64,000 nt of DNA, from IMG/VR virus record IMGVR_UViG_3300048438_000153, positions 124,001 through 188,000 of that record. One strand, written 5' to 3'. A program made the position numbers and the translations under genes. The notes beneath the pieces were generated by a model that saw nothing but the letters and a program-made list of their open reading frames with translations, ran no database searches and was not told the DNA's origin. Shown here in pieces: positions 44,636 to 62,674 of the stretch. Each line of letters begins with the position of its first letter. Position 1 is the first letter of the stretch.

Positions 44636-45655
44636 TTATCCTAGAGCGATCTTCGTAGAAAGAACAAGCTCCTTAGAAACCCTGTATGGGTCAGCGTTCG
44701 CGTTGGGTCTTCTATCCTCGAAATAGCCCTTAGAATTCTGAACTGTCTCAAGAGGTATTCGGACGCTCGCGGTACGGTCAGACGCGCCCCACCTAAACTC
44801 GTCATAGCGACACGTCTCATGCTTACCCGTGAGGCGGATCTCGTAGCCGTCTCCATAGGCTTCAAGGTGACCTGTCAGTCGCCCTGACATGGTTTTAAGA
44901 ATCTTCTCTATGTTCGAGAAGCCCACGCCGTCCTCTCTAGTGCTCGCAGTAGAGAAGTTAGTGTGCATACCCGCGCCATTCCAATCTCCGGGGACGGGCT
45001 TAGGGTCAAGGGTCGCAGAGAGATTGAACTCTTCCCCAACACGATATAAGAGCCATCTTGCGATCCACACATAGTCTGAAGAATCAACGATGTCTATGTG
45101 TGGACCTCCAACTTGGAACTCCCACTGACCGGGCATGACCTCAGCGTTCACACCTGTGATGGGGATGTCTGCTTTAAGACAAAGCTCAAGATGCTTTTCT
45201 ACAAGAGCGCGTCCCGCCACCTCATCTGAGCCCACTCCGCAGTAGTAAGGTCCTTGAGCGGGTGGGAATCTTCTTTCTGAGGGAAAACCCACAGGCTTCG
45301 ATCCCTCAAAAAGAGTATACTCTTGCTCAAAGCCTCCCCACGCCATCATTTCTCTATCGTAGACGCTCGTTAGCTGAGATCTGTAGTTAGAGGGGTGAGG
45401 AGTCACACCATCTGCGAGAAAGACTTCACAGAGGACGAGCACATTCTGATCTCCCCGAATAGGGTCGCTTACGACCTTTACAGGGCGTAAGACGCAATCA
45501 GAGTTGTCTCCCACAGCTTGCTCTGTGGACGAGCCGTCGAAAGACCAATCAGGGAATTGAGGGAGTCCGTTTACAGGAGGAAGAACCCTAGTCTTAGAAC
45601 GAACTCTCGCGGTGGGCGAGCCTCCATCAATCCAAATATATTCTGCAATCACCAT
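44636..45655 (-). CDS. glnII: Glutamine synthetase type II
   Basis: AEYIWIDG, WSFDGSST.QA, QGPYYCGVG, NAEVMPGQWEFQVG, DWNGAGMHTNFS, RLTGKHET, GYFEDRRP. Confidence 0.96.
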   Translation of the reverse strand: MVIAEYIWIDGGSPTARVRSKTRVLPPVNGLPQFPDWSFDGSSTEQAVGDNSDCVLRPVKVVSDPIRGDQNVLVLCEVFLADGVTPHPSNYRSQLTSVYDREMMAWGGFEQEYTLFEGSKPVGFPSERRFPPAQGPYYCGVGSDEVAGRALVEKHLELCLKADIPITGVNAEVMPGQWEFQVGGPHIDIVDSSDYVWIARWLLYRVGEEFNLSATLDPKPVPGDWNGAGMHTNFSTASTREDGVGFSNIEKILKTMSGRLTGHLEAYGDGYEIRLTGKHETCRYDEFRWGASDRTASVRIPLETVQNSKGYFEDRRPNANADPYRVSKELVLSTKIALG

Positions 45656-45736: not shown

Positions 45737-47383
45737 TCATACGACTTGATCCAAGAGATGAGTGACCACCGCGCTCTTGATGTACTTGAAGCTCTTGGGT
45801 GTTAAGACTCCGCCGATCTCAAAGTACGTTTTAGATCTTTTCAGAGCCTCCATGAAATGATCTCTAATCGACTCTTTAGAAAGACCGTAGTTCTTTCTCA
45901 GATACTCTTCGGACTCAGACGCAATCTGCTGTAGAAAAGCCTTAACCTCTGAGCTGTGGTTCACATACCTCCGAGCCTCAGCTACTGACTTATTCTTTCT
46001 CCCGTATCCCTCCATATTCTTATGGTAAAGAATCTTGTCGTAGGCATGAGTCACCTCATGCTCAAGGATACCTAAGAACTCTCTTTTGAATTTAGCCTCG
46101 AAGTTTGAATATTTACGAGTCAAAGGGTGTGTCAGGTTCGCGGGGTAGTCCTTTATCCGAATGATGATGTGATGGTCATTAAAGATATATAGCCCACTAC
46201 CTTCTCTATCTTTATCAATCTCAGCAGTGACATAGACACTCTCTTCACCGACACTAAGTTTGCCTACTAGAAAGTGAGGAAACCTAGAAGCCTCAGAGAT
46301 ATAAGACACACCCTTCTCTGTAGCTTTCTCGGCGCGTTTCTCAATCTGACCCCAAGCTTGGTCTGTAAGCTCTCTTAAAGGGCGCTTATCTATACGGATG
46401 GGGCGAGCCGCCGATTTGTCTTTGATCAAGTCCTTGCCCTCTTCAGAGAACGTCGGTGTGAGAACAGGCTTCTGACCCTCACTCTTAGCCTCCTCACTCC
46501 TCTTCTTGCGCGCCAACGTAGCCCTCTGTTCTTTCGTGAGATCGTGGGCTTTGTCTCTCGGCATACACTTGAGTGGGTTCTTTCCTCCATCCGTGACGCT
46601 TCTCCAACTCGGCTCACTAGAGATGGCACATGGGCCAACAATGTCTCCTGCCTCATAAGTCTTAGACTCCCCGTTTTCTTTCTCTACGGTGTGTTTGATC
46701 GGAGTGATCGCGATCCAATCACCCCATGTAGCTCGCTCATCGGGCTTACCCCCACCATGACCCGCAAACCAAGTGGAAAGACCGCCATGACCTGTATTCT
46801 TAAGTTTGGGGCCATCTCTCTGTGCTGATCGTAGATATCGGGAAGCTACCCTATATGGACTACTAGACCCTTTTTTGACCCCATAGCAGTTCTTATATGG
46901 TCTACAAGACGCTTTCTCTGAGAAGCCCATCTCGCCACAGATCTTGGACTCACAGTGCTCTTTATCCCACTTACGAGGCTTCTTGTACGAAGTATCTTTC
47001 CCCGAAGAGTTCTTTCTCAGAGAAGGGTTTCTGAGCATGGTATCTCTTGTCCTGAAATCTTTGTTCCTACCCTTGTTAGGCTTGAACCCAAATCTCCTAT
47101 AAAACTTAGTCAAACGAGACACGGAGCTCGCGCCGAAGTCTGTTGAAGGAGAAAGAGATAACATAACACCATGATCATCAGCCCAAGAGATAATCTGAGA
47201 CATGACCTCTGAACCCAAACCTTGCTTTCGATTTTCTGAGGGGATCTGAACTGTCATGATCCTGACGATAGGGGCGTGATATTCATCCCCGCTCGATAGG
47301 AAAGAAGTCCATAAAACAAGACCCTGATATCGTCTCTCTAAGTTATCTTCTAGTGTCTTTAGCGACTGCTCTAAAATAGACAT
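45737..47383 (-). CDS. Multi-module protein: GNAT-like + small Cys domain + basic domain + zincin
   Basis: RKQGLGS...LTKFYRRFGF (GNAT); RVASRYLRSA and KSA linkers; ILEHEVTHAYD...YVNHSSEVKAF. Confidence 0.7.
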   Translation of the reverse strand: MSILEQSLKTLEDNLERRYQGLVLWTSFLSSGDEYHAPIVRIMTVQIPSENRKQGLGSEVMSQIISWADDHGVMLSLSPSTDFGASSVSRLTKFYRRFGFKPNKGRNKDFRTRDTMLRNPSLRKNSSGKDTSYKKPRKWDKEHCESKICGEMGFSEKASCRPYKNCYGVKKGSSSPYRVASRYLRSAQRDGPKLKNTGHGGLSTWFAGHGGGKPDERATWGDWIAITPIKHTVEKENGESKTYEAGDIVGPCAISSEPSWRSVTDGGKNPLKCMPRDKAHDLTKEQRATLARKKRSEEAKSEGQKPVLTPTFSEEGKDLIKDKSAARPIRIDKRPLRELTDQAWGQIEKRAEKATEKGVSYISEASRFPHFLVGKLSVGEESVYVTAEIDKDREGSGLYIFNDHHIIIRIKDYPANLTHPLTRKYSNFEAKFKREFLGILEHEVTHAYDKILYHKNMEGYGRKNKSVAEARRYVNHSSEVKAFLQQIASESEEYLRKNYGLSKESIRDHFMEALKRSKTYFEIGGVLTPKSFKYIKSAVVTHLLDQVV

Positions 47384-47384
47384 A

Positions 47385-48515
47385 TTACACGACCTCATTC
47401 ACGAAGATGCCCACCGCTTTCTTCCAATTTCTAGGCTTGTACCTTTTAAGAGATTGAAAGAACTTCCTGTGGTTTAAGTAGCTTCTAATGTCACTGTTCT
47501 TAGGCTGAGGATTTCTCTCCCTAAAGTTAGTCACCTCATCTAAGAGACGAGAATAAAACTCAATGTCGTCGAGCGCATGGATCGAAATGAGACTAGGATC
47601 AAGACCCTCAGATCTGTACTGATTTCTGAGGGTCTTTTCTTTCTCCCTGTCGTGTTGCCGAAAAGTTCTGTCTCTACTTGAGGTAGGTAAACCCGCTTCA
47701 GAAACTCCCGCATTTAAAGCCATCTGTCTCTGAAAAGCATGGACAAGCTCATGTCGGGCAAAGTCCTCAATCTCTCTCAGCTCTTCCACACCTAAGTTTC
47801 TTTCCTCTGAGAACATGACCACGCCTATAATATGCTTTTTCTCTCTAGAAAGAGAAATCGAATCTTGACTCGGATCATAGAGCTTATAGTAAGCAGGACT
47901 CTTTTCAGAACTCTTAGACCCCTGTTCTACTTTCCCTACTAATGTGAGATCTCCAAGCTCCTCTGTATGAAGTACATTAGTCTTAATAGAATCCTGAATC
48001 TTGGCAAGTCTCTCATATAAAGGTCTTGCCGAAGCAGATATGAAAGGAGTCCGACCCTTGTAAAGACTCTTAAGGTCGGACATCAGACTGAAAAAGTCCC
48101 CCTCTAAATCACCAACGGAGCGCCTAAAATCTCTAGGGCTGTCCGAATAGCTTAAAGACTTCAGATCACGGATCTTCGCCTTCACCCTGTTAAGAGAAGA
48201 TGGCTGTTTCAAGCCCCCTCTCCAAGACGATGTGAGCTCATCAAGAAAAAGCTCGGCGCGATCTAACAGCCTGATGTAGCGAACACCATTATCTCTCCTA
48301 AGCGAGTCAGAAGCGTCTTCTAAATCCTCAAAAGACTCGTTTAGGTCTGATATCAGATCCTTATTTAAGAAAGAACTCTCTTCTAGGAGATTCTGCTTGT
48401 TGACCCAATAGCTCGCAAACTTAGCCTGAAGCCTTTCAGTAACTTCTTCTACGAGGTGTCTTGGAGGTCTTATCAAGCCCGCACTTTTAGGTTCAGATGC
48501 TCTTACTCTCATCAC
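47385..48515 (-). CDS. Zincin-like metalloprotease-domain protein
   Basis: KSA-GLIRPP start; RHELVH; HALDDIEFYSRL. Confidence 0.75.
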   Translation of the reverse strand: MMRVRASEPKSAGLIRPPRHLVEEVTERLQAKFASYWVNKQNLLEESSFLNKDLISDLNESFEDLEDASDSLRRDNGVRYIRLLDRAELFLDELTSSWRGGLKQPSSLNRVKAKIRDLKSLSYSDSPRDFRRSVGDLEGDFFSLMSDLKSLYKGRTPFISASARPLYERLAKIQDSIKTNVLHTEELGDLTLVGKVEQGSKSSEKSPAYYKLYDPSQDSISLSREKKHIIGVVMFSEERNLGVEELREIEDFARHELVHAFQRQMALNAGVSEAGLPTSSRDRTFRQHDREKEKTLRNQYRSEGLDPSLISIHALDDIEFYSRLLDEVTNFRERNPQPKNSDIRSYLNHRKFFQSLKRYKPRNWKKAVGIFVNEVV

Positions 48516-48750
48516 ACAACCTCATCCACGAAGATGCCCACCGCTTTCTTCCAATTTCTAGGCTTGTACCTTTTAAGAGATTGAAAGAACTGACTGCGGT
48601 CTAGGTGAGCGCGTATATCCCTGTTCTTAGGCTGAGGATTTCTCTTCCTAAAGTTAGTCACCTCATCTAAGAGACGGGAATAAAACTCAATATCATCGAG
48701 CGCATGAACAGAAATAAGACGAGGGTCTAGACCCTCAGATCTGTACTGAT
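47387..48750. repeat. ~237-bp near-identical 3' ends of adjacent zincin genes (47387-47623 and 48514-48750)
   Basis: Long identical blocks at offset 1127. Confidence 0.88.
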
Positions 48751-50512
48751 CCCTCATTGACTTCAGTAGCTCTTTCTTATCTTCAACATCATCCGAGTCA
48801 AAGATGTTAGGTTGCCTGAAAGTCTTGTCATATCTTGAGCGTGGGAGCCCTGTATCTCTGTATTCTCTAGGAGAAACATTCGGCTTACTTAAGTGGCGCT
48901 GAATAGCGATTTCTTTCTGCATGAGGTGAACTAACTCATGTCTCGCCACATCCTCTATCTTATCAAGCTCAAAAGCCCCCCAAGTGGTCTTCCCTGAATC
49001 GAAATAGAAAGTGATGATGTGTGCCGTATTACCGAAACCATAAGACCCTCCCGCCCTAAGAGGACTCTTAAACTCTACATTCACATAGAGAGGGTGAGAA
49101 AGAGATGGATCACTCAATCGCCACGAGTAGCCCGACCTTGAAACCTTACGTCTGTGTGAGTTCTTCTGAAAAGCCTCTTCGTACTTCTCTTTCGCGTAAG
49201 GATTGATCAGGCTCATGCCTGAGCCATTCGCGCCCTCAAAAAGATCTCTGAACAAGTCTGAAAGAGTCCTGATATCCTCTTTGTACAAGCTCACTTTTTC
49301 TAAGAGGTCTTGAGGGTTGAGCCTAGAAATGATCTCGTGCGCGTCTATGATCTTAGAGAGATCATCGCTGTCTGTAACTTTCCCACTGAGAGTGTTCAAG
49401 TAGTTCTTTCCGCTCTTGAGTTGGAAAGAAACATCGCTCAGAGACTCCTCACCTCTCTTAATACCTTTCGGAAGATAGGCGAAATCATCAGCAAAAGCCT
49501 CAAGGATGTCTAGGTCGTCTGAGCTGTAGGGGCTACTGTTTCTAGCTTCCATATCGAGTAGATACTCAGCGAGCGCGCCCTTAGCAATCTCGGTCAGCTC
49601 TTTGACGAGGTGTTGAGGTGGTCTAATCAACCCTGCTTTTCTTAAAGCAGATCCGTTGTTCGCGAATCCACTGTCGTAAGGGATAACACGCGCAGAACCG
49701 CTACCGCTGTCATGGACGTATCCCAAGTCGAGTCGGTTGGCGGGAGTCCTCCCGTTAGCCTCAGACTTATCGAGATTTCGGTACTTCAGATTGGGTGAAT
49801 CAGGGGAAGGTCTACCTATGTTTCTTGCCGAGTCTCCATTGGGGAGCGCGCTGTGTGCGTCCGTTCCATCGGGATTGTCTGAACGACCGATGGGAGTACC
49901 TTGTGTCAGGCTTGAGAGCTGATCAGGTGGAGTGACTTCTCTATAGAAATCAGCCCTTCTTTCTAGCGAAGCAGTCTTACCTGTGTCTGCGATATGGTTG
50001 AGCCAAACACTCTCTAGGTCTGTGTTGAAGACAGAAATCTCTATGGGCTTAGAATAGCGCCATGTGGAGACAGTCGTTTTCTGCTCTGTAGTCCACTGAG
50101 AGTTCCCCCAACCAGGTTCTTGAGAATAGGTAGTCTCTACTTGATAGAAAGCGTTCCCTTTGAAAGTGACCTTTGGAGATCGGGAGTAGAAATCGACCTC
50201 AAGCTCTCCCGCTAGACCGATAATCTGAGGATCGACTTTAGACGAGGTGAGTCTATCGGCGATCCTCTTCATTTCTGTCGTGCTTACATTGAAAGGGGAT
50301 ACTGCGTAAGACCAAGGTACGTTACCATTCTTATTAAACCACGCAGACGTGAGAGACTTGATCTCACTCTCTACTTCGGCGTACCTGTTGAACGTAGAAA
50401 TGTTGCTGAGAAGAGCGGTCTTGACGGCTTCCCTGAGATCAGGGTTATCGTGCTTAACAGTTACCGAAATATCATTAGGACTTGAGTACCAATCAGATGA
50501 CGTTCTTCTCAT
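48512..50512 (-). CDS. Multi-module protein with C-terminal zincin domain
   Basis: Starts MRRTS; linkers RYA, KTAS, RRA; RKA-GLIRPP, then RHELVH and HALDDIEFYSRL. Confidence 0.75.
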   Translation of the reverse strand: MRRTSSDWYSSPNDISVTVKHDNPDLREAVKTALLSNISTFNRYAEVESEIKSLTSAWFNKNGNVPWSYAVSPFNVSTTEMKRIADRLTSSKVDPQIIGLAGELEVDFYSRSPKVTFKGNAFYQVETTYSQEPGWGNSQWTTEQKTTVSTWRYSKPIEISVFNTDLESVWLNHIADTGKTASLERRADFYREVTPPDQLSSLTQGTPIGRSDNPDGTDAHSALPNGDSARNIGRPSPDSPNLKYRNLDKSEANGRTPANRLDLGYVHDSGSGSARVIPYDSGFANNGSALRKAGLIRPPQHLVKELTEIAKGALAEYLLDMEARNSSPYSSDDLDILEAFADDFAYLPKGIKRGEESLSDVSFQLKSGKNYLNTLSGKVTDSDDLSKIIDAHEIISRLNPQDLLEKVSLYKEDIRTLSDLFRDLFEGANGSGMSLINPYAKEKYEEAFQKNSHRRKVSRSGYSWRLSDPSLSHPLYVNVEFKSPLRAGGSYGFGNTAHIITFYFDSGKTTWGAFELDKIEDVARHELVHLMQKEIAIQRHLSKPNVSPREYRDTGLPRSRYDKTFRQPNIFDSDDVEDKKELLKSMRDQYRSEGLDPRLISVHALDDIEFYSRLLDEVTNFRKRNPQPKNRDIRAHLDRSQFFQSLKRYKPRNWKKAVGIFVDEVV

Positions 50513-50526
50513 GAGGTAGCTCTTTC

Positions 50527-52077
50527 TTAGTTAGAGAGACAAGCTCTAATATCAGCGAGCGCGTAGTGACTCCGAGGAACTTGGAGGAGCTGAAGAAGCT
50601 GAGGTCGATACTTAGGGTTCTCGTAAGCGAGCTTAACGACAGCAGTCTTAGCTACAAAGGCGTCCTCTCCAAGCTCGTCCTTAACTACTTCTACTTCTCT
50701 CTTAGCTTCCTCTCCCTTTTCTTTCTTAGCCTCAGAAACAGCTTTATCAAGGTTCTTCTTAACCTCAGCGTGGAAAGCCTCAGTCTGCTTTTTCATATCG
50801 GCCTGAAATGCTTTTAAGTCAAAGCCGTTCGGAGTGACAAACTGAGAAAGGTAGTCAATCTGATCAGCATCAATTGTTGAATAATACTCAATGATTTTCT
50901 GCTTGAGAGATTCAATGTCCTCTTCAGAAGCACTCTTAAACCAGCTCTTTAAACCTGACACACCTTTACTGCCCTTCCCCACTCCTTTCTGAGTTAAACC
51001 TCCAATACCCTCAGCGATACCTTTAACTCCTTTTAAAGCGATTGCACTAACACCCGCAACGGAGGTTACAGCCATTGCGACTGCTTGTGCTCCAGCCACC
51101 GCACCTCCTGCTGAAAGTCCGACTGCACTTCCAAATGCTTCTATGCCCATATCAGCAAAACTTGAGCTCGCTTCTGAAGCACCCTCAGCTTGAGCGTCAT
51201 TAAGACCATTCTTCTTAAAAATGGAATGATGGGCTTTTTTTATCTTATTTCGACTCTCTTCCCCCCACTTACCAATCGCCTTTAATTTTGTTTGTAACTC
51301 TTCAGCACTCTCAGGAATAGATTCGGTGAGAGTTTTTCCCGCTTGACTAAGAGTATTACTACCCTTTTCATCTAGCTTACTCGCCTCCTCAAGAGCCATA
51401 TCTATCGCGATACCTACGTCTTGAGAGCTGTCGAGAACTAACTGTCTCTTCACTTCAGCAGAAATCTCTGAAGCTAACTGAGCTCCGCCCTCTTTAAGAG
51501 CAGACACAGCTTTCTCCTCACCCTCAGTCAGTTGCTTTTGCTTGTTCCACTTTTCTGCAAGATCTGCGATAGCTTTCTTAGCTTGTTCATGGAGACTAGA
51601 TGCCTCATCAAGCGCATAACCTATTGCAGTAGAAACGGCTAGTGATCCCTCCATAGCCTCAGAGATTTCGACCCTTTGGTTTTGCAAAGACCTCTCAAAC
51701 TCAGATTGACTCTCAATAGGTACACCTATCGCAGTCTCTAGTTTAGACTTCTTTTTGTCTTTTTTGTTCTTGTTGTCTTTCTTATTCTTGTCGTCCTTCT
51801 TATTGCGCTTATCCGCTCTGTTCTGTTTTCTCTTCTCTCCCTTGTTACCCCTATTCTTAGTCTTCTTCGCCTTAGACCTACCTGCCTCTTTAAAGATGTC
51901 TCCCGTGAAGAAAGGAAGCACATAATCCCTGATCTCAGGGTTCGCATAAGCGAGCTTGATGACCCTCGAAATAAGATCTTCTTCTGAAGCTGTCCTGAGA
52001 GAGATCAGAGGGAGGATATCGCCTCTAGTTTCCTCGTTTTCGTAAGCAGTACGGATCAAGTATTCTCTAATGTTCAT
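50527..52077 (-). CDS. Protein with three xAY(E/A)N motifs and a Gly/Ala-rich hydrophobic segment, putative head/ejection protein
   Basis: LIRTAYENEETR, VIKLAYANPEIR, VVKLAYENPKYR; AVGLSAGGAVAGAQAVAMAVTSVAGVSAIAL. Confidence 0.65.
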   Translation of the reverse strand: MNIREYLIRTAYENEETRGDILPLISLRTASEEDLISRVIKLAYANPEIRDYVLPFFTGDIFKEAGRSKAKKTKNRGNKGEKRKQNRADKRNKKDDKNKKDNKNKKDKKKSKLETAIGVPIESQSEFERSLQNQRVEISEAMEGSLAVSTAIGYALDEASSLHEQAKKAIADLAEKWNKQKQLTEGEEKAVSALKEGGAQLASEISAEVKRQLVLDSSQDVGIAIDMALEEASKLDEKGSNTLSQAGKTLTESIPESAEELQTKLKAIGKWGEESRNKIKKAHHSIFKKNGLNDAQAEGASEASSSFADMGIEAFGSAVGLSAGGAVAGAQAVAMAVTSVAGVSAIALKGVKGIAEGIGGLTQKGVGKGSKGVSGLKSWFKSASEEDIESLKQKIIEYYSTIDADQIDYLSQFVTPNGFDLKAFQADMKKQTEAFHAEVKKNLDKAVSEAKKEKGEEAKREVEVVKDELGEDAFVAKTAVVKLAYENPKYRPQLLQLLQVPRSHYALADIRACLSN

Positions 52078-52136
52078 TGGGTTTGCCCTTTCTAAGCGCA
52101 AGTTTCTTTTCTTAACTTAACGACGAGATAAAAAAA

Positions 52137-54785
52137 TTACTCAACCCTCTGTCTGAGGAGATAAAGGTTAGTCTCGTGAGCGTTCGCCATAGACATAATA
52201 AAGTCGTCCATCCCTAGAGTGAGAACGTCCATTTCTTTCAGCGCCTTATAGATATTCTTGAAGGCTACCTGTAGAGCTTCCTCCACAATCAGAGCGCGGA
52301 GAATAGGGTTGTCTTCAGCCTGAACCTCAGCGATAGGGAGAATCGTGTTCGCCATCAACTGTGCCTGATCTACAGGAGAGACAGCTCGACCTCCGTATGT
52401 ACCCACGATCTTCTCAGCGAGCGTGTCGATCTCTTCGATAAGACTTTGGTAAATCCTCTCTAGTAAGAGATGATCTCCATACTGACTCTCACCCTTCACT
52501 TGCCAATGACTCGTCCAATGAGCCCAATGCGCGCCCCTCAATATGGCGAGCAGAACTTGGAGCGTAGAGAGGGCCATGTCTTTCTCAGAGGCTTTCTTTC
52601 TCCAACCCCCACCTAGCTCTTTGTAAGACTTACTAGCCCAACCGTTCGCATAGGCGCTAGGGTACTTCCTAAAGCCTTCTCCGCCACGAACAGGATTGAT
52701 AATCTTATCACCCCTAGAAACAGGGTTCTTTCTATCGCCTTTAGCGAGGTCTATAATCTCGCCCCACAGCTTAGGGTCAGTAGGCATATTCTCAGCCCCC
52801 CTCTCTATGAAGTTAATGTGCTGAAAAGAGTCCACAGGGATTTGACGATACATCCTAGAAAGAATAGACCTCACGGCCTCTCTCTGCATCGCTTTCTTTC
52901 TTAGTTGCACTTTTCTCGATTTTTGGTTCTTCTGAGTCACGGTCGAACTCCCCCCACCTTCTAGGCGTTTATATCTTTTAGGGTTGTCTCTTCTCCTCTT
53001 ACCTGAAAGGAGAAGCTTGGTCTTATTTCGGAGGTAGTACCTCTTGTTGTCTCTCTTCATCTGACCACGATCTCTACGTTTTTTCTTAACATAGTCGATC
53101 TTGTTCTTTCTGTTGAGAGTCCCCTTAGTATCTCTTTGCTTTCTTCTAGGTGGGCGCAAAGTGATCTTAGCTCTCCCCCGATGCTTCGGGTCAGCTATTC
53201 TTTCTTCTTGAGCCATCTTAGGTCTGCGAGCTAAGCCTGTGGTTTTATTAGCGTCCACATAGGGGTGTCCATATTGATCTCCAGGTATGCCTGAGCTTCT
53301 AGGGCGTTGATGAAGAGGCTTACCATCAGGCTGATTAGGTAGTGCGTTCGGATTCGGTGCTTTCCCGTAGTTAAGAGAAGCTCCTGAGCTGTCTGAAGGC
53401 GTGTTGGAAACAGGAGGCCCTGATCGGTACTCGTCACGCCCTTTCGGATGACCGCTAGGAAGGGGCAGAACTCTATCTCTTTGCGACTTACCATCCTCAT
53501 AGTCTTGACGGCTAGGTTCGGGGGCAGAGGTGTCGTTATCGAGTCCGTCTTGACGACTCTTGCTAACCCAAGTCTGAACGCCCGCTAAGTCCTGTATAAG
53601 TTGCCTAGCAACACGGGTGTTAGAGTCCTCCGTGACAGCCTGATAGAACAAGCCAACAGCTTTGTCCCAAGACTTTCTCTTAAAGTGCTTGAGAGCCCTA
53701 AAGAAAGGACTACTGTTGATGTGTCTACGAACGGTGGAGTTGTTTTTTCTGAGAATGGGATTTCTGAAGTAGCGAGATCTGAACTCCTCAACCTCGTCTA
53801 AGAGTCTCGTATAAAACTCAACGTCATCAAGGGCATGGAAGTTAGCTAAGTTAGGGTCTAAGCCTAAGTCCTTGAGCTCCTGACGCACTTGACGCTCTTT
53901 TGACTTATTATGCTGAGTGATCTTAGTGTCTCTTCTCTTAAAGGGTAAGCCCCCTCTATCTGACAAGCCCTCTCTCTGCCCTATTTCTGACTGAACCGCG
54001 TGGACTAACTCATGCCTAACAGTGCCCTTCACCTGAGCCAAGTCATCTCGGCTGTAATCGGTCTTCTCAGGGATCATAATCTTGATGTGGTGAGCGGAGT
54101 TCCGAAAGCTGTGCGTACCGAGTACGTTTGAATCCATAAACTTAAAAGACAGGACTATGGGATAAACAAATTCAGGGTGAGTGATTCTCGCCTCCACACC
54201 CAAGTCTATGTGGGTGTGGGAGGTCTTAAGATACTCTCGGGGAAACCGACTTTGAGCGAGCTCAAACATATCCTTATCTTGATAAGGATATGACTCTTTC
54301 TTTTCCTTCAGATTTTTAGACACATATAGAAGGCATAAAGAGAGCTTCATAACATCTATCTTGTTATCCCTAAGAACCTTGAGCGACTTATCTGAATTTG
54401 AAAGAGTTTCGAGGTCATTCCAACTAAGAATCTTCTCAAAGAGAGTAAGTGCAAGGTTAGCGTCGTCTCTTATGTTCTTATTTTTATAAGTGTTTTTCTT
54501 AGTGTCTGCGATGACTATTCGGAGTACGTCATGATAGTCATGAAGGAGATCTTCGAGAAGCTCGAATAGCTCTTCCATGTCTTCGTTTTCAAAGTCTTTA
54601 AGATACTCCGAAATCTCTTTCGCCATGCCTTCAAGGTCTTCGATCTCCTCTTCGCTCACTATAGAACTAAAAATTTTAGTGAGAACGTGATCAGCTAACA
54701 CACCCTGAGCTATTTCAGCCACTATTCTAAAAAGCTCGGGAGGAGGCTTCATTAAGCCTGCTTCTTTGTCTGAGAACCTTGCCAT
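52137..54785 (-). CDS. Multi-module protein: zincin + basic modules + Dps/ferritin-like domain
   Basis: KEA-GLMKPP, RHELVH, HALDDVEFYTRL; C-terminal HWQVKG...DHLLLERIY....EIDTLAEKI. Confidence 0.78.
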   Translation of the reverse strand: MARFSDKEAGLMKPPPELFRIVAEIAQGVLADHVLTKIFSSIVSEEEIEDLEGMAKEISEYLKDFENEDMEELFELLEDLLHDYHDVLRIVIADTKKNTYKNKNIRDDANLALTLFEKILSWNDLETLSNSDKSLKVLRDNKIDVMKLSLCLLYVSKNLKEKKESYPYQDKDMFELAQSRFPREYLKTSHTHIDLGVEARITHPEFVYPIVLSFKFMDSNVLGTHSFRNSAHHIKIMIPEKTDYSRDDLAQVKGTVRHELVHAVQSEIGQREGLSDRGGLPFKRRDTKITQHNKSKERQVRQELKDLGLDPNLANFHALDDVEFYTRLLDEVEEFRSRYFRNPILRKNNSTVRRHINSSPFFRALKHFKRKSWDKAVGLFYQAVTEDSNTRVARQLIQDLAGVQTWVSKSRQDGLDNDTSAPEPSRQDYEDGKSQRDRVLPLPSGHPKGRDEYRSGPPVSNTPSDSSGASLNYGKAPNPNALPNQPDGKPLHQRPRSSGIPGDQYGHPYVDANKTTGLARRPKMAQEERIADPKHRGRAKITLRPPRRKQRDTKGTLNRKNKIDYVKKKRRDRGQMKRDNKRYYLRNKTKLLLSGKRRRDNPKRYKRLEGGGSSTVTQKNQKSRKVQLRKKAMQREAVRSILSRMYRQIPVDSFQHINFIERGAENMPTDPKLWGEIIDLAKGDRKNPVSRGDKIINPVRGGEGFRKYPSAYANGWASKSYKELGGGWRKKASEKDMALSTLQVLLAILRGAHWAHWTSHWQVKGESQYGDHLLLERIYQSLIEEIDTLAEKIVGTYGGRAVSPVDQAQLMANTILPIAEVQAEDNPILRALIVEEALQVAFKNIYKALKEMDVLTLGMDDFIMSMANAHETNLYLLRQRVE

Positions 54786-54829
54786 AAGAACCTACCTAAA
54801 GCGCAGTTAAGGAAATGTAGAAAGTAACC

Positions 54830-55396: not shown

Positions 55397-55447
55397 TGTC
55401 TTTCTCCTACTTTGAGTGTCTGAGAAAGACTGAGTATCAAGAGAGTA

Positions 55448-56555: not shown

Positions 56556-57011
56556 ATGGAATCCTCACTCAAGTACAGTACCGAAAGGATAAGAGTTACC
56601 ATGAAAAACGTCTATTACTTCGCATACGGAACGAACCTCGAAGAACACTCTATGAAAGATAGATATCCCTCAGCAGAAATCTTCAAGTTCGGTGTTCTTA
56701 AAGGGTTCAAGCTCAAGTTCAAGAACGGAGTGAGCTCAGTAGAAGAAAGAGAGCGATCCGACTATGTTGAAGGACTCATTTACACCATCAACGAAAACGA
56801 TATTGAAGATCCCTTGAAAGGGTCAACCCGATGTGAGGTAGACGTGATTACGGACTGCGGAAACACAGTGCGCGCTATCCTCTTCTTCGCCAAGAAGAAA
56901 GAAGAGTCTCGACCCTCTGAAGAATACCTCTCAAGGATGCTTAAGAAATACGGAGACTATGGGTTCAATAAGAGGCACTTGGAGAGCGCGTTTCTTTCGG
57001 CAGATAGTTAA
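56556..57011 (+). CDS. Gamma-glutamylcyclotransferase (AIG2/GGCT-like)
   Basis: YYFAYGTNL, VEGLIY, PSEEYL. Confidence 0.75.
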   Translation: MESSLKYSTERIRVTMKNVYYFAYGTNLEEHSMKDRYPSAEIFKFGVLKGFKLKFKNGVSSVEERERSDYVEGLIYTINENDIEDPLKGSTRCEVDVITDCGNTVRAILFFAKKKEESRPSEEYLSRMLKKYGDYGFNKRHLESAFLSADS

Positions 57012-58993: not shown

Positions 58994-59872
58994 TTAGCGA
59001 GTAACGGTGAGGCGAGCAAGACCGCGTGGGTTGTACGCGCCGATACCCAAATTCTCAAAGACTGAGAAACCGATGGTGCGAGCCTTCGGATCGTCAGCAG
59101 AAAGAACAGTAAGCTCAGTACGGACAGGGATGCGTCCGAACATCTCAGGCTCACAGCAGACGTACACAGTGCCGACAGGAACTAGACGGCTAGTGATGAT
59201 CTGTGCGCCCCAAAGAGTAGCCTGAAGACCAGTCTTAAGGAGCGCTGCTTGGCTCTCGATGTCGAGAATGTCGCGACCAAACTTACGGATGTCAGCGTAG
59301 TCACGAGCGTTCATGAAGACGCGAGAGACACGGAGGTCGTGACGCTCGATAAGAGCGTATGCGTCAGCGAGAACAGCACCGTTAAGAGGAGCGATGACAG
59401 GAATGTCAGCGTTAGTCTGACCAGGGAGACTGTCGAAGCCTTGAGTCGCAACCGCGTCGAGGATAGCGAATACACGCTCGTCCTCAGCCGCCTGAATCTG
59501 AGCGCGAGCCAAGTCTTGAGCCCTCTCGATCAGATCGAAGCGACGCTCCTTGATCTGAGTGAGTGGGATCTCAGGGTTTGATGCGATCTCGAAAAGAGGG
59601 AAGATCACACGACGTGGCTTGGTGATAGCGAGGATGTTCTCGCCCTCTTCACCTACCACGAACGCGGTCACGTCAGGGTCTTTGTCGTAGATCGGAAGCG
59701 CACCATCAGGAAGTTGCTCTACGAGGAAAGTCTTACGACCAACGCTCGTATAGTCACGACGGAGACGGAGAGGTTGTGTCATTGAAGCGGCTAGCTTCGC
59801 ACGACCTTGTGGGGTCTTAATGTAGTCAGCAATGATCTTTTGCTTTACTGCGTTATCGACGTTGTTACTCAT
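58994..59872 (-). CDS. Major capsid protein (HK97 fold)
   Basis: 292 aa; order protease-scaffold-decoration-MCP followed by a terminator; IQAAEDERVFAILD spine helix, VFMNARDYADI, LWGAQIITS. Confidence 0.82.
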   Translation of the reverse strand: MSNNVDNAVKQKIIADYIKTPQGRAKLAASMTQPLRLRRDYTSVGRKTFLVEQLPDGALPIYDKDPDVTAFVVGEEGENILAITKPRRVIFPLFEIASNPEIPLTQIKERRFDLIERAQDLARAQIQAAEDERVFAILDAVATQGFDSLPGQTNADIPVIAPLNGAVLADAYALIERHDLRVSRVFMNARDYADIRKFGRDILDIESQAALLKTGLQATLWGAQIITSRLVPVGTVYVCCEPEMFGRIPVRTELTVLSADDPKARTIGFSVFENLGIGAYNPRGLARLTVTR

Positions 59873-60639: not shown

Positions 60640-62649
60640 TTAACCGAAGTACTTGCTGACGTCGGGAGCTGACTCCCAAAGCTTAGAAAGCTCGTCAGAA
60701 GCAGAGCTTGCTTCACGGCTGATGTTACCGAGTGTCTTAACAGACGCTTGGCGAGCCTGAGTCTGAGGGCGGAAAGAAGCTGATTTCTGAGTAGTAGCGG
60801 TAGCCTCCTCTTCAGACGCCTCCTCCTCAGATGCCTCTTCATCAGCGGCTTGGAAGATACGAGCGAGCTTAGGATCGACATCGACATTATCTGAAGCCAT
60901 GTGAAGACCCATTACGTCCTCAGCCATGTCCTCAGCCATATCCTCAGCCATATCCTCAGCCATCATGGTTGCCTCGTGATCCTCAGCCATCATGGTTGCC
61001 TCGTGATCCTCAGCCATATGATGCATCGCCATTTCTTCTTCAGCAGTCATGTCGAATTGGCTAGGATCATTCTGATCAGCCATCATCATCTCTGCTTCCA
61101 TCTCAGCGAGCATCTCATTAAGCATTGCTTGCTCTTCAGAAGCTAGACGCATCTCATCGAAATGAGCTTTCTTCTTCTTAGGAACACGTTGACCTTCAAC
61201 ATTGTGCTTGTAAGGGCGAGGTCTTGCCTTCTGACCCTGTGGGTTTGACTTTGAAGGCCAACGCTCAGGGTTGTTCACATAGTAGGTGTGGTTGTAACTA
61301 GCCTTTGATCCAGGCTCTTGCAACAATTCTTTGCGAGCTTTAGTCTTAGGTCGTTTACCCTTCTGACCACTGCGATTCCAATTCCAAATAGCCTTTCTAT
61401 CTTCATCAGAAAGATAGTCTTGCCAATCGGGATTAGCCTTACCGTAATCCTTAATGCCCTTACCGCGACGACCCCAAGCCTCTTTGTCCTCAGCCATCAT
61501 GTCCATCTCAGCCATGATCTCTGCGAACTCTTCATCAGAAAGAATATCCTCAGCCATCAACTCGTCGTTGGCTTTTTTCTCTTTTTTTCCTTCTGATTGA
61601 GGAACACCCCAAAAGAGATGTTTGTACTTCTGATAGTACTCTTTGTTGTGCTCTTGCTTGTCCTCATCAGTCCAACCCGTAGTTCCGGGAGAAGAGCGGT
61701 ACTGACCTCTCATCTTGGAGTCCATATACTCAAATTTGTCTAGAGTTTTTCCGTAGGGCTCTTGCGTGTGAGGAGATTTAAGTTTGCCTGGATCCGTGAA
61801 TGACTTCCATCCATCTTCTTTCTTGCCCCAAGCACCTTTAGCAACGATGTTCATCTCAGCCATGATCTCAGCCATGCGGTCTGCATCGCCCATGTGAGAA
61901 GCCTCGTGCATCATCTCAGCGAGAATGGCCATGTCCTCTGACATCATTTCTGAGGCGAGTTTCTTAGTAGGACCTTCGCCCTCTTCCTCGTCGAGAACCT
62001 CAACGCTCTCGTCGTCGCCCTCATGACCTGTCTCTTGCTGAACTACGTCCTCTGCCATGCGACGCATTTTAGAAGCGAGACGGGCGTTAGCCGCTTTGAG
62101 CATGGCGATTTCTTCAGCCATGTCTTCTTCAGCCATCATCTCAGCCATGACGTTATCTACGCCCTCGTCATCACCCTCGTAGCCTGTAGCCTCTTGCATC
62201 GCATCCTCTCCAAGAAAGTCTGAAGCGATACGCTGGATCTTGGCATTGATCTGACGTGATGGGAGATCCATGTAACGAAGGGCAAGATCCTCGATCTCAT
62301 CCTGTGATGCAGTCCTACCGAGACGGCTCTCAGCAATCTCGATGCACTTAGAAGCCTTGCGCTCCATAGCCTTGCGGAGATTCTGCTCGTAGAGGTCAGA
62401 AGTCTCCTCATAGTCTGAAATGATGTCCTCAGTAGCTGCGGGATGATCTGCTTCCCAACTGTATGAAGCGGGGGCAGGTCCTGAGCGGTAAGGACCTTCG
62501 TGAACGCCCTCGCCAAATTCTGAGTCGATGCCATAAGCGTCAACTGAGGGCTGTGCTTGTGATGCGGGATGACCGAAGCTCTCGAAGCCCTGATCATCAT
62601 AACCTGGTAGGCTAGAAGTGTTAGCCCTACGGAAACTATTCCTAGACAT
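60640..62649 (-). CDS. Putative scaffold/core protein with MAE repeats
   Basis: Between protease and capsid genes; very acidic and Met-rich with many MAE(D) units; probable start MSRNSFRRA with SD AAGGA. Confidence 0.65.
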   Translation of the reverse strand: MSRNSFRRANTSSLPGYDDQGFESFGHPASQAQPSVDAYGIDSEFGEGVHEGPYRSGPAPASYSWEADHPAATEDIISDYEETSDLYEQNLRKAMERKASKCIEIAESRLGRTASQDEIEDLALRYMDLPSRQINAKIQRIASDFLGEDAMQEATGYEGDDEGVDNVMAEMMAEEDMAEEIAMLKAANARLASKMRRMAEDVVQQETGHEGDDESVEVLDEEEGEGPTKKLASEMMSEDMAILAEMMHEASHMGDADRMAEIMAEMNIVAKGAWGKKEDGWKSFTDPGKLKSPHTQEPYGKTLDKFEYMDSKMRGQYRSSPGTTGWTDEDKQEHNKEYYQKYKHLFWGVPQSEGKKEKKANDELMAEDILSDEEFAEIMAEMDMMAEDKEAWGRRGKGIKDYGKANPDWQDYLSDEDRKAIWNWNRSGQKGKRPKTKARKELLQEPGSKASYNHTYYVNNPERWPSKSNPQGQKARPRPYKHNVEGQRVPKKKKAHFDEMRLASEEQAMLNEMLAEMEAEMMMADQNDPSQFDMTAEEEMAMHHMAEDHEATMMAEDHEATMMAEDMAEDMAEDMAEDVMGLHMASDNVDVDPKLARIFQAADEEASEEEASEEEATATTQKSASFRPQTQARQASVKTLGNISREASSASDELSKLWESAPDVSKYFG
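60916..61017. repeat. Coding tandem repeats (12-bp MAED and 27-bp MAEDHEATM units)
   Basis: Repeated tcctcagccat units. Confidence 0.85.
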
Positions 62650-62674
62650 AGGATTTCCTTTCTGCATGAAGGGC

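What the first reader, a model, noticed from the sequence alone, without database searches (positions are those of the whole stretch)
52137..54785. Zincin-to-Dps polyprotein
One 882-aa ORF joins a zincin, a Pro/Gly-rich segment, an Arg/Lys-rich segment, a small AYANGW..YKELGGGW domain and a Dps/ferritin-like bundle. The linkers are RVA, KMA, RIA, KKA and KKAS. Established: Dps works as a free oligomer, so the fusion makes most sense if it is cut. A packaged Dps plus basic peptides could protect or condense phage DNA.
Basis: partly seen in the sequence, partly recalled or inferred. Interest (0 to 1): 0.6.

Follow-up and report, generated by a model that had tools for sequence, protein, structure and literature searches.

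The report
Jumbo-phage head polyprotein ending in Dps
A 275-kb uncultivated phage encodes, near its capsid genes, one long protein that ends in a Dps iron-storage domain, and the only copy of a probable head-protease cutting motif in it lies exactly where that domain would be released.

Summary
The C-terminal 150 aa are a genuine Dps-family domain with the four ferroxidase ligands at canonical spacing. At least 149 free-standing relatives of 140-260 aa exist. The N-terminal HExxH domain is zincin-like by motif, topology and weak fold matches, and it recurs inside giant multi-enzyme polyproteins of huge phages. The Pro/Gly segment is not a loose linker: it is the best-conserved part of the family.

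New here: the tetrapeptide [KR]-x-A-S is 2.6-fold over-represented in this phage's proteome (147 vs 56, z 12.6). This replicates in two related complete genomes and fails in a T4-like control. The motif is densest in the prohead protease, its scaffold-like neighbour and other morphogenesis proteins. I read it as the prohead-protease site.

The ORF has exactly one copy, KKAS at residues 730-733, at the junction before Dps. In fused homologues the motif occurs only at module junctions.

Cutting at KKAS is therefore supported indirectly. Packaging and DNA protection remain inference. Verdict: a new variant of known polyvalent or ejection-protein precursors.

The parts
52137..54785 (-). 882-aa ORF (P0001): modular head-module polyprotein
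   Evidence: Fusion conserved in homologues P0004-P0010, P0013 and P0014.
54294..54785 (-). residues 1-164: acidic helical bundle preceding the zincin-like core. The N-terminal motif K7..G10-L11..P14-P15 is invariant in the family.
   Evidence: AF2 model, (helices 16-163). Only generic helical-bundle matches. Invariant columns.
53610..54293 (-). residues 165-392: zincin-like core. HExxH is at 54000-54014 and invariant E323 at 53817-53819.
   Evidence: Model pLDDT 85.7, pTM 0.82. Invariant H258, E259, H262, G279, E323 and F324 across 48 sequences. The only long-coverage PDB matches are gluzincins, Z 4.7-6.1. Atlas neighbours are M3, M78 and SprT-like. 160 representative homologues exist, some inside polyproteins of 2924-3381 aa.
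53220..53609 (-). residues 393-522: conserved Pro/Gly-rich linear module
   Evidence: Nearly invariant columns 398-499 in alignment A1. No Pfam or Atlas match.
52887..53219 (-). residues 523-633: Arg/Lys-rich segment (39% K+R, pI 11.7)
   Evidence: Homologues P0012, P0015, P0017 and P0018 end exactly at the end of this segment.
52590..52886 (-). residues 634-732: spacer plus small AYANGW..GGGW domain (DUF5872-like, below threshold)
   Evidence: tblastn to the Synechococcus phage S-BM3 T4-GC_119 protein, E 3e-6. DUF5872 E 3.5e-4 in that protein, below the cut-off. The domain is N-terminal or fused to PAP2 in relatives.
52587..52598 (-). K730-K-A-S733: the only [KR]-x-A-S motif in the protein and the predicted prohead-protease site (cut inferred between A732 and S733)
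   Evidence: Conserved as KKAS, KQAS or RRAS at this junction in all fused homologues.
52140..52589 (-). residues 733-882: Dps-family mini-ferritin domain (16.9 kDa, pI 4.9). Ferroxidase ligands are H760, H772, D787 and E791.
   Evidence: PHROG 3636/858 and Pfam DUF5856. PDB profile search. Invariant ligands. Homodimer model 0.51 vs control 0.00. NCBIfam Dps E 5e-6, below the cut-off.
62675..64000 (-). prohead (head maturation) protease. The ORF runs on to window-equivalent position 64093. It carries 5 [KR]xAS motifs.
   Evidence: phrog_18299 E 1e-15 / 4e-17. tblastn to the Gordonia phage Pupper capsid maturation protease. Motif counts. Conserved site just after the catalytic domain.
60640..62685 (-). 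681-aa acidic, Met/Ala/Glu-repeat, scaffold-like protein with 9 [KR]xAS motifs (0.69 expected)
58994..59872 (-). HK97-fold major capsid protein
   Evidence: phrog_2522 E 4e-51. NF042927 E 7e-46, above the cut-off.
48512..50512 (-). 666-aa paralogue: N-terminal domain, one KTAS motif, a Pro/Gly-like module and the zincin-like domain
47385..48515 (-). 376-aa paralogue: zincin-like domain alone, ending where the zincin module of P0001 ends

Best explanation
The ORF encodes a precursor of internal head or ejection proteins of a ~275-kb jumbo phage, built like the 'polyvalent proteins' of phages. It strings together a zincin-like domain, a conserved Pro/Gly peptide module, a strongly basic segment, a small AYANGW domain and a Dps mini-ferritin.

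Shown:
- The domain identities, and the position in the same-strand morphogenesis block (terminase, portal, protease, scaffold-like protein, capsid protein, then this gene about 4 kb further on).
- The modular shuffling of these parts in relatives.
- The proteome-wide excess of [KR]-x-A-S, concentrated in the protease and its neighbours.

Inferred:
- [KR]-x-A-S is the recognition site of the phage's prohead protease, cut between Ala and Ser as in herpesvirus assemblin.
- During head maturation the protease cuts the precursor once, at A732|S733. This releases a 150-aa acidic Dps domain of the same size as the free-standing phage Dps-like proteins, which can then form the Dps dimer and oligomer with an inter-subunit ferroxidase site.
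- The 84-kDa N-terminal fragment (zincin, Pro/Gly, basic and AYANGW parts) stays in one piece. It supplies DNA-binding charge and possibly a peptidase that acts after ejection.
- The Dps product most likely sequesters iron and detoxifies peroxide next to the phage DNA, in the capsid or in the newly infected cell. It is unlikely to bind DNA itself.
For: Domain identities:
- Dps. The H-12-H-15-D-4-E spacing is invariant in 28 sequences and pairs with the Dps ligands in the HMMER alignments.
- Zincin-like domain.
- The same domain sits inside a 3381-aa protein (nucleotidyltransferase + zincin + topoisomerase IB) and a 2924-aa protein (PrimPol + 2H + zincin + 3'-phosphoesterase) of huge phages.

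Context: terminase, portal, protease and capsid genes lie on the same strand.

Motif statistics:
- G000: 147 observed vs 56.4 +/- 7.2.
- 22 different Ala/Ser codon pairs are used, so the signal is at protein level.
- 131 sites remain after collapsing paralogous contexts.
- G001: 146 vs 58. G002: 118 vs 51.
- Partial records L058 and L017: z 6.3 and 6.7. The T4-like control gives z 1.3.
- Position scans: only R/K at P3, only A at P1, S at P1' (z 20).

Where the motif lies:
- Top carriers are the protease-adjacent scaffold-like protein (9 vs 0.69) and the protease itself (5 vs 0.38), and the same is seen in G001 and G002.
- A conserved site lies directly after the protease catalytic domain in 4 of 5 orthologues.
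- P0001 has one site, at the Dps junction. In fused homologues every site lies at a module junction.
- Free-standing Dps homologues start at the same place.

Analogies:
- Assemblin sites VQA-S and YLQA-T (PMC4498786).
- The giant-phage prohead protease motif AXE processes ejection proteins (PMC10052503).
- MPTase-bearing polyvalent proteins are thought to be packaged in capsids (PMC5512222).
Against: - There are no proteomic or biochemical data, so cleavage, packaging and activity are all inferred.
- One motif in an 882-aa protein with 19% K+R is not itself unexpected in number (about 0.6 expected). The argument rests on its position and conservation.
- Many motif copies sit at residues 3-7 of proteins, where a cut would remove only 5-6 residues. 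That fits a binding or modification signal as well as a cleavage site.
- The capsid and portal proteins carry no site.
- The protease could not be tied to the T4 gp21 or HK97 S78 families, so the assemblin analogy is by function only.
- In relatives G001 and G002 the Dps junction lacks a canonical site (SRAT, RKAH), and in G002 the gene lies about 60 kb from the protease.
- Zincin fold matches are weak (Z <= 6.1, Foldseek E > 0.04).
Confidence: 0.55

Rival explanations
1. Self-processing polyvalent protein. The protein's own zincin-like domain, not the prohead protease, cuts the chain at several [KR]-x-A linkers (RVA, KMA, RIA, KKA, KKAS). This would happen in the head or after ejection and would free all modules, as the reader proposed and as Iyer et al. 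propose for MPTase domains.
For: - HExxH plus Glu is invariant in 48 diverse homologues.
- The domain is a hub in giant multi-enzyme polyproteins, and some relatives carry two copies in one chain.
- This is the published model for MPTase domains (PMC5512222).
- Module boundaries in relatives coincide with RVA (the end of the stand-alone paralogues) and KKA (the C-termini of P0012, P0015, P0017 and P0018).
- [KR]-x-A is kept at the KMA position while the next residue varies.
Against: - [KR]-x-A followed by anything other than Ser is not enriched (z 0.6).
- The [KR]xAR excess is one paralogous leader family.
- The enriched motif is carried by many proteins that have no zincin domain, most densely by the protease and the scaffold-like protein. 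That points to a trans-acting head protease.
- Coinciding gene boundaries show modularity, not cleavage.
- Peptidase activity of this family has never been shown, and its fold matches are weak.
Confidence: 0.15
2. Uncleaved multidomain protein. The full-length chain is the working form. The Arg/Lys segment serves as a very long DNA-binding tail for a Dps cage displayed on a larger scaffold, and the KKAS junction is simply a conserved linker.
For: - In G001-type relatives a 353-aa protein keeps a basic segment fused to Dps with no [KR]xAS between them.
- Fusions to Dps-family cage proteins are structurally tolerated, as the engineered Dps-family chimeras among the PDB hits show.
- Classical Dps needs a basic tail for DNA binding (established knowledge), and the isolated domain here is acidic.
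- N4 vRNAP, ArdC and TraC1 travel uncleaved although they carry an MPTase domain (PMC5512222).
Against: - The motif is conserved as KKAS, KQAS or RRAS at this junction while its flanks vary, even when the upstream neighbour differs (P0014).
- The junction coincides with the natural N-termini of at least 149 free-standing homologues.
- Twelve 84-kDa appendages around a 9-nm cage would be very crowded (inference).
Confidence: 0.2
3. [KR]-x-A-S is not a cleavage site. It is instead a phosphorylation site (basic residue at -3 of Ser) or a docking motif that sorts proteins into the prohead, and the polyprotein is merely tagged by it.
For: - The motif is about ten-fold enriched in the first 12 residues of proteins (15 vs 1.4, 25 vs 1.8). 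It opens a leader shared by at least 10 paralogues. A cut there would remove only 5-6 residues.
- A basic residue at -3 of Ser is typical of basophilic kinases (established knowledge).
Against: - No protein-kinase domain is found in the genome.
- An invariant Ala at -1 is unusual for kinase motifs but is the rule for assemblin-type A|S sites.
- The highest density is in the protease itself, at the end of its catalytic domain, and in the scaffold-like protein. That is the classic pattern of autoprocessing and scaffold degradation.
Confidence: 0.1

Closest known systems
Polyvalent proteins of phages and conjugative elements with zincin-like MPTase domains (Iyer, Burroughs, Anand, de Souza, Aravind 2017; PMC5512222)
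   Same: - Several unrelated modules in one chain with an HExxH..E zincin-like hub domain, sometimes in two copies.
- Encoded beside late or structural genes of portal-terminase phages.
- Processing into separate units is proposed.
- A solo GNAT lies nearby, as in cluster C mycobacteriophages.
   Different: - No Pfam MPTase-PolyVal or LPD model matches. The only pointer is an Atlas lead to LPD23 at 0.89.
- A Dps or ferritin module is not among the domains named in that paper (0 occurrences).
- The junction carries a motif that points to the prohead protease, not the MPTase, as the processing enzyme.
Head ejection/internal protein precursors of giant phages cut by the prohead protease (SPN3US gp245 motif AXE; phiKZ, 201phi2-1; T4 gp21 with internal proteins)
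   Same: - A short linear motif is recognised by one head protease.
- There are many substrates, including the protease itself and scaffold or ejection proteins.
- Long N-terminal parts are separated from a C-terminal mature part (PMC10052503).
   Different: - The motif here is [KR]-x-A-S, not (A/S/G/L/I)-x-E.
- The protease is of the PHROG 18299 / Bxz1-like mycobacteriophage type and shows no detectable similarity to T4-type gp21.
- The released C-terminal part is a Dps.
- There are no MS data.
Herpesvirus assemblin release and maturation sites
   Same: - Cleavage between Ala and Ser/Thr (VQA-S, YLQA-T; PMC4498786).
- One site lies directly after the protease domain and further sites lie in the scaffold, matching the conserved [KR]xAS after the catalytic domain here.
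   Different: - The basic residue at P3 is specific to this phage clade.
- Homology of the protease to assemblin was not shown here.
Dps family (DNA protection during starvation; mini-ferritins) and phage DUF5856 'DNA-binding ferritin-like' proteins
   Same: - The profile matches 56 Dps structures.
- The H/H/D/E ferroxidase ligands have canonical spacing.
- The predicted two-fold dimer places those residues at the interface.
- Free-standing phage homologues are about 150 aa.
   Different: - The domain is fused to the C-terminus of a 732-aa precursor.
- It is acidic and has no basic tail.
- It scores below the curated cut-offs of Pfam DUF5856 (28 vs 34.6 bits) and NCBIfam Dps (27 vs 114 bits).
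- Its oligomeric state and activity are unknown.

Membership tests
Dps family (ferritin-like superfamily) | Sequence homology to Dps profiles or structures | tested here: met
   A profile of 28 phage homologues hits 56 distinct Dps chains at E <= 1e-3, best 2e-9, and some matches span the full length. The single sequence gives E 6e-4 to 4cyb. PHROG 858/3636.
Dps family (ferritin-like superfamily) | Inter-subunit ferroxidase ligands His-12-His-15-Asp-4-Glu | tested here: met
   H760, H772, D787 and E791 are invariant in A5. They pair with the corresponding residues of 4cyb and 3iq1 in the HMMER alignments. The equivalence to E. coli Dps H51/H63/D78/E82 is from my own knowledge.
Dps family (ferritin-like superfamily) | Two-fold dimer that brings the ligands of two subunits together | tested here: met
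   Homodimer model score 0.51, best control 0.00. That mark was reached by 20 of 30 solved pairs and 1 of 23 single chains. pLDDT 90-91, and runs agree in >= 90% of contacts. The interface includes residues 25-31 and 54-61 of the 149-aa piece. The pass may reflect memory of solved Dps dimers.
Dps family (ferritin-like superfamily) | Dodecameric cage, Fe(II) oxidation, DNA binding | not testable with these tools
   Needs SEC or EM and ferroxidase and DNA-shift assays on residues 733-882.
Dps family (ferritin-like superfamily) | Score above the curated family cut-offs (Pfam DUF5856 / Ferritin, NCBIfam Dps) | tested here: not met
   DUF5856 28 bits vs 34.6. NF006975 26.7 vs 114. It is a divergent phage subfamily, and many homologues do pass PF19174.
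Zincin-like metallopeptidase (gluzincin / MPTase of polyvalent proteins) | HExxH on a helix that follows a beta-sheet, plus a downstream Glu on a later helix | tested here: met
   Strands 22-74 are followed by helix 82-107, which carries HELVH, in the pLDDT 85.7 model. H258, E259, H262 and E323 are invariant in 48 sequences. Metal geometry was not examined.
Zincin-like metallopeptidase (gluzincin / MPTase of polyvalent proteins) | Significant sequence or fold match to a known zincin family | tested here: inconclusive
   - The only long-coverage PDB matches are M3 and M34 peptidases, but Z is 4.7-6.1.
- Foldseek E > 0.04.
- Atlas: M3 TM 0.49, plus M78 and SprT-like.
- Pfam: SprT-like, WLM and eCIS_core at E 0.05-0.2.
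Zincin-like metallopeptidase (gluzincin / MPTase of polyvalent proteins) | Hub domain in multi-domain phage polyproteins | tested here: met
   Found at 987-1137 of a 3381-aa NTase + Topo IB protein, at 1218-1356 of a 2924-aa PrimPol + 2H + 3'-PE protein, and next to an M23 domain. There are two copies in P0012 and P0015.
Zincin-like metallopeptidase (gluzincin / MPTase of polyvalent proteins) | Peptidase activity | not testable with these tools
HExxH domains with other chemistry exist (8s5f appears among the weak hits).
Prohead-protease substrate (internal/ejection protein precursor) | Encoded in the head morphogenesis module | tested here: met
   Same strand and block as TerL, portal, protease, scaffold-like protein and MCP. 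Not so in G002, where it lies about 60 kb away.
Prohead-protease substrate (internal/ejection protein precursor) | Carries the protease's recognition motif at a domain boundary | tested here: met
   There is a single [KR]xAS at 730-733. That the motif is the protease's site is itself an inference.
Prohead-protease substrate (internal/ejection protein precursor) | Processed fragments present in virions | not testable with these tools
   Uncultivated phage with no proteome.
DUF5872 (small AYANGW domain) | Score above the Pfam gathering threshold | tested here: not met
   The window's domain gives no hit. The homologous cyanophage protein scores 21.6 bits vs 27.5, and P0020 gives E 0.09.

The most novel reading that the evidence does not exclude
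A clade of uncultivated huge phages (275 to >500 kb) uses an assemblin-like 'Ala|Ser' cleavage code, [KR]-x-A|S, read by its prohead protease. The code dismantles the scaffold and cuts modular polyproteins inside the head. In this phage it releases a ferroxidase-competent Dps mini-ferritin that is packaged with the genome. That would be the first virion-delivered, protease-released Dps, accompanied by a zincin-like enzyme and a protamine-like basic segment.
Probability: 0.3. Interest if true: 0.8.

Novelty: new variant of a known kind. Interest (0 to 1): 0.66.

Why it matters
If the reading holds, it gives three testable things.

1. A cleavage code for a whole clade of huge phages that nobody has cultured. 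Mature virion proteins could then be predicted from sequence alone, as the AXE and LxE motifs allow for phiKZ-like and T4-like phages.
2. A parallel between tailed-phage and herpesvirus maturation proteases at the level of site specificity (Ala|Ser), beyond the known shared ancestry of their capsid machinery.
3. A new kind of cargo for phage heads. An iron-oxidising Dps cage subunit delivered with, or stored beside, the DNA bears on how very large genomes survive oxidative damage outside and just inside the host.

It also adds Dps to the repertoire of 'polyvalent protein' modules. It further shows that the zincin-like hub domain of this family links DNA- and RNA-repair enzymes in giant polyproteins.

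Tried and rejected
- **DNA similarity.** DNA search of 50000-56000 against 50,697 phage records found no match.
- **Full N-terminal model.** Foldseek vs PDB gave nothing, and VIA-align gave only generic four-helix bundles. I therefore refolded the core alone.
- **Core model.** Foldseek vs PDB had no hit at E <= 0.001.
- **Pfam and PHROG.** They are blank for the zincin-like domain, its two paralogues, and the Pro/Gly and basic segments. The Atlas is blank for the Pro/Gly segment.
- **Literature.** A search for DUF5856 returned 0 papers.
- **Capsid and protease families in the genome.** PF25209, PF05065 and PF04586 gave no hits. The capsid protein was found through PHROG and NCBIfam instead.
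- **Protease relationships.** hhalign of the protease family against a T4-type gp21 gave no relationship, and phmmer of the protease against the PDB found nothing. The 'assemblin-like' label therefore stays an analogy.
- **Kinase.** A Pkinase search of the genome found nothing.
- **Secondary motif variants.** [KR]xAR looked enriched when pooled (z 7.1), but about 11 of 55 copies in G000 are the leader DLE[IM]R[VI]ARLE and the rest are at expectation. It was rejected. [KR]xAQ is modestly enriched (z 3.4 in G000, 5.7 in G002), so KMAQ at 523 cannot be excluded as a minor site.
- **DNA-level explanation.** A DNA-level cause for 'AS' was rejected because 22 different codon pairs are used.
- **Giant polyproteins.** Motif sites in P0077 and P0111 all lie outside the annotated domains. 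Those domains cover only about 17% of the chains, so this is not significant.
- **Intein-like insert in L013.** Pfam did not recognise it at E <= 0.01.
- They were not used. Independent contigs already confirm the fusion.
Full report
**1. The observation**

The ORF at 52137..54785 (minus strand) runs from ATG to stop and encodes 882 aa. The window is bases 124001-188000 of a 275,102-bp IMG/VR virus record estimated 88% complete. The identical protein, and relatives 85-91% identical, occur on independent ENA, Logan and JGI contigs. The same five-part fusion persists in homologues only about 48-54% identical in the N-terminal domain. The fusion is therefore real.

**2. The C-terminal domain**

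Residues 733-882 match Pfam DUF5856 (E 5e-6, below the cut-off) and PHROGs 3636 and 858, annotated as DNA-binding and starvation-inducible proteins. Searched alone, the domain finds at least 149 proteins of 140-260 aa at 43-93% identity. Many of these are named 'DNA-binding ferritin-like protein' by JGI.

A profile of 28 of them hits 56 distinct PDB sequences, all Dps family, with a best E of 2e-9. H760, H772, D787 and E791 are invariant. Their spacing of 12, 15 and 4 is that of the Dps ferroxidase ligands, and they align with the corresponding residues of 4cyb and 3iq1.

A homodimer model scores 0.51 against a best control of 0.00. That mark was reached by 20 of 30 solved pairs and by 1 of 23 single chains. 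pLDDT is 90-91 and the runs agree in at least 90% of contacts. The interface includes the ligand-bearing helices. This pass may simply reflect likeness to solved Dps dimers. The domain is acidic (pI 4.9) and has no basic tail.

**3. The N-terminal domain**

No Pfam or PHROG model matches it. It has two tandem paralogues just downstream on the same strand, at 48512..50512 and 47385..48515.

An exhaustive search with residues 165-392 found 160 representative homologues at E <= 1e-3, in proteins of 72 to 3381 aa. In 48 diverse members H258, E259, H262, G279, E323 and F324 are invariant.

The core folds with pLDDT 85.7 and pTM 0.82 as a beta-sheet followed by the HExxH helix and a helical subdomain. 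Foldseek finds nothing significant. With VIA-align the only matches covering most of the model are gluzincins:
- M3 oligopeptidase 4ka8: Z 6.1, rmsd 3.8, 128 aligned.
- Dcp: Z 5.2, 143 aligned.
- Neurolysin: Z 4.8, 147 aligned.
- Anthrax lethal factor: Z 4.7, 139 aligned.

All of these are below the level that is convincing on its own. Atlas neighbours that carry family names are Peptidase_M3, M78 and SprT-like. Individual homologues give weak Pfam hits to SprT-like, WLM and eCIS_core. I call the domain zincin-like. Peptidase activity is unproven.

The domain is embedded in giant polyproteins. One is a 3381-aa protein with a poly(A)-polymerase-type nucleotidyltransferase and a topoisomerase IB, on a 520-kb contig. 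Another is a 2924-aa protein with LigD PrimPol, a 2H phosphoesterase and a LigD 3'-phosphoesterase. A third protein carries an M23 peptidase. This is the architecture that Iyer et al. call polyvalent proteins, in which a zincin-like MPTase is the hub domain (PMC5512222).

**4. The middle segments**

The Pro/Gly-rich stretch (393-522) is the most conserved part of the family, with columns 398-499 nearly invariant. It is a functional linear module of unknown role and not a loose linker.

The basic stretch (523-633) is 39% Lys+Arg.

The AYANGW domain recurs in a T4-like cyanophage protein next to the small terminase gene. It is weakly DUF5872-like. It is N-terminal in some relatives and fused to a PAP2 phosphatase in another.

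In relatives the modules are shuffled or encoded separately:
- Several homologues end exactly at the end of the basic segment.
- The stand-alone zincin paralogues end just before RVA.
- In G003 the Dps is a separate gene directly downstream.
- In LR745208.1 it is a lone 161-aa gene.

**5. Context**

On the same strand lie, in order:
- the large terminase and the portal;
- a 1146-aa protein;
- the only head-maturation-protease candidate in the genome (phrog_18299; tblastn to a mycobacteriophage-type capsid maturation protease);
- an acidic 681-aa Met/Ala/Glu-repeat protein that looks like a scaffold;
- the HK97-fold major capsid protein;
- several small genes;
- this ORF;
- a Lys-rich 524-aa protein;
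- the two zincin paralogues;
- a GNAT protein.

**6. The junction motif**

Counts:
- [KR]-x-A-S occurs 147 times against 56.4 +/- 7.2 in per-protein shuffles (z 12.6).
- [KR]-x-A followed by any other residue is at expectation (z 0.6), and x-A-S without the basic residue gives z 1.8.
- Twenty-two different Ala/Ser codon pairs are used, so the signal is at protein level.
- 131 sites remain after collapsing paralogous contexts.

Replication and controls:
- The excess replicates in two related genomes fetched whole: G001 (375,691 bp, 146 vs 58) and G002 (296,642 bp, 118 vs 51).
- It also appears in 50 kb of LR745208.1 (z 6.3) and on the 520-kb contig (z 6.7).
- It is absent from 50 kb of the T4-like cyanophage S-BM3 that include its head genes (z 1.3).

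Specificity, from pooled positional scans:
- only Arg or Lys three residues before the Ser (z 20.6 and 9.2);
- only Ala at the position before it (z 20);
- Ser itself at z 20.

Where the motif is densest:
- the scaffold-like protein: 9 vs 0.69, Poisson p 5e-8;
- an 866-aa protein near the terminase: 10 vs 0.95;
- the protease itself: 5 vs 0.38;
- the protease and its neighbour again rank near the top in G001 and G002.

In 4 of 5 protease orthologues a [KR]xAS lies directly after the catalytic domain. Dense sites in the scaffold, self-sites in the protease and a release-type site after the protease domain are the pattern expected of a prohead-protease recognition motif. Herpesvirus assemblin cuts Ala|Ser or Ala|Thr (PMC4498786). 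Giant-phage proteases use similarly short motifs on ejection proteins (PMC10052503).

**7. What this means for the ORF**

P0001 has exactly one [KR]xAS, at K730-K-A-S733. It lies between the GGGW end of the small domain and the first Dps helix.

In the fused homologues the motif is kept at this junction while its flanks change:
- It reads KKAS, KQAS or RRAS.
- It is kept in P0014, whose upstream neighbour is a different module.

Every other copy in these proteins also lies at a module junction:
- before the extra FFEYP module;
- at the end of the basic segment in P0012;
- just before the zincin start in P0020;
- just after the AYANGW domain in G002.

A cut between A732 and S733 would give a 150-aa, 16.9-kDa product. 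Its N-terminus would coincide with those of the free-standing homologues.

The other four 'linkers' are followed by Arg, Gln, Asp and Met:
- The [KR]xAR excess is one paralogous leader.
- [KR]xAQ is only modestly enriched, so KMAQ may be a minor site.
- RIA and KKA have no support as cleavage sites. KKA does mark a module boundary.

**8. Weighing**

The domain composition and modularity are shown. That [KR]xAS is a functional motif of this phage clade is shown statistically. That it is the protease's cleavage site, and that the Dps is thereby released and packaged, is inference.

Points against:
- There is no proteome.
- Many motif copies sit at residues 3-7 of proteins (15 proteins vs 1.4 expected), where a cut would remove almost nothing.
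- The capsid and portal proteins have none.
- The protease could not be linked to gp21 or S78 families.
- G001 and G002 lack a canonical site before Dps.

The main rivals are self-processing by the zincin-like domain, an uncleaved protein whose basic segment serves as a Dps tail, and a non-proteolytic role for the motif. No kinase domain was found.

**9. Novelty**

Polyvalent proteins, protease-processed ejection proteins and phage Dps-like genes are each known. Three things are new here:
- a Dps as the terminal module of such a precursor;
- the predicted [KR]-x-A|S code shared by several uncultivated huge phages;
- the zincin-like hub family that links them.

I rate this a new variant of a known kind, of above-average interest because the predictions are sharp and cheap to test.

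Noticed in passing
window 8300..9100, 16934..17641 and 17744..18307 (all -), plus at least 7 more ORFs elsewhere in the genome: At least 10 otherwise different proteins begin with the same ~20-aa leader, M(M)RRTASEILSDLEIR[VI]ARLE. It opens with a [KR]xAS motif. This looks like a shared targeting or oligomerisation leader. G001 has 25 proteins with the motif in their first 12 residues.
   Followed up: partly
window 45737..47398 (-) residue ~183; C-terminus of the 1146-aa ORF at L019:597-4037; several N-termini elsewhere in the genome: A second short motif, [KR]VAS[RAM][YH][LM] (for example RVASRYL), recurs at protein N- and C-termini. It also appears as RVA[QEH]RYLESAKRDDPK at the start of a conserved module in relatives.
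   Followed up: no
L013:5998-8985 (G002), inside the AYANGW motif: An insertion of about 330 aa splits PSAY | NGW. It starts with Cys, ends in GN followed by Ser, and contains a LAGLIDADG-like FFAGCVMCDGW stretch. It looks like an intein with a homing endonuclease in the most conserved motif of the small domain. Pfam did not recognise it at E <= 0.01.
   Followed up: partly
P0077 (L017:8001-18146, 520-kb contig) and P0111: These are giant polyproteins of huge phages that combine a CCA/poly(A)-type nucleotidyltransferase and topoisomerase IB, or LigD PrimPol, a 2H phosphoesterase and a LigD 3'-phosphoesterase, with the same zincin-like domain. They may be packaged nucleic-acid repair kits.
   Followed up: partly
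window 50527..52101 (-): A 524-aa protein directly downstream carries a Lys-rich run, Ala/Gly-rich hydrophobic stretches, three copies of an (A/L)AYENPExR..LLP-like motif and two [KR]xAS-EED sites. It has no family match.
   Followed up: no
window 62675..64000 (-) and orthologues L020-L022, L058: The head protease has conserved GAHNFVEH and SMGCS motifs, which are candidate His and Ser catalytic residues. It also has an inserted four-Cys CTKCGH..C..C element, apparently a zinc ribbon inside the protease domain.
   Followed up: no
window 44636..45655 (-), 45737..47398 (-), 56556..57011 (+): A glutamine-synthetase-like protein (Gln-synt_C E 2e-16), a GNAT protein that matches a 3925-position PHROG profile, and a gamma-glutamyl cyclotransferase-like gene on the opposite strand all lie in or beside the head block.
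   Followed up: no
L014:5986-7341 (G003): In this relative the AYANGW domain is fused to a PAP2-superfamily phosphatase (E 1.4e-8), and the Dps is a separate gene directly downstream.
   Followed up: no
genome C1:41035-53649 (-), outside the window: A 4204-aa ORF and several other ORFs of more than 1000 aa have no family matches. Most proteins scanned in this genome have no PHROG hit.
   Followed up: no
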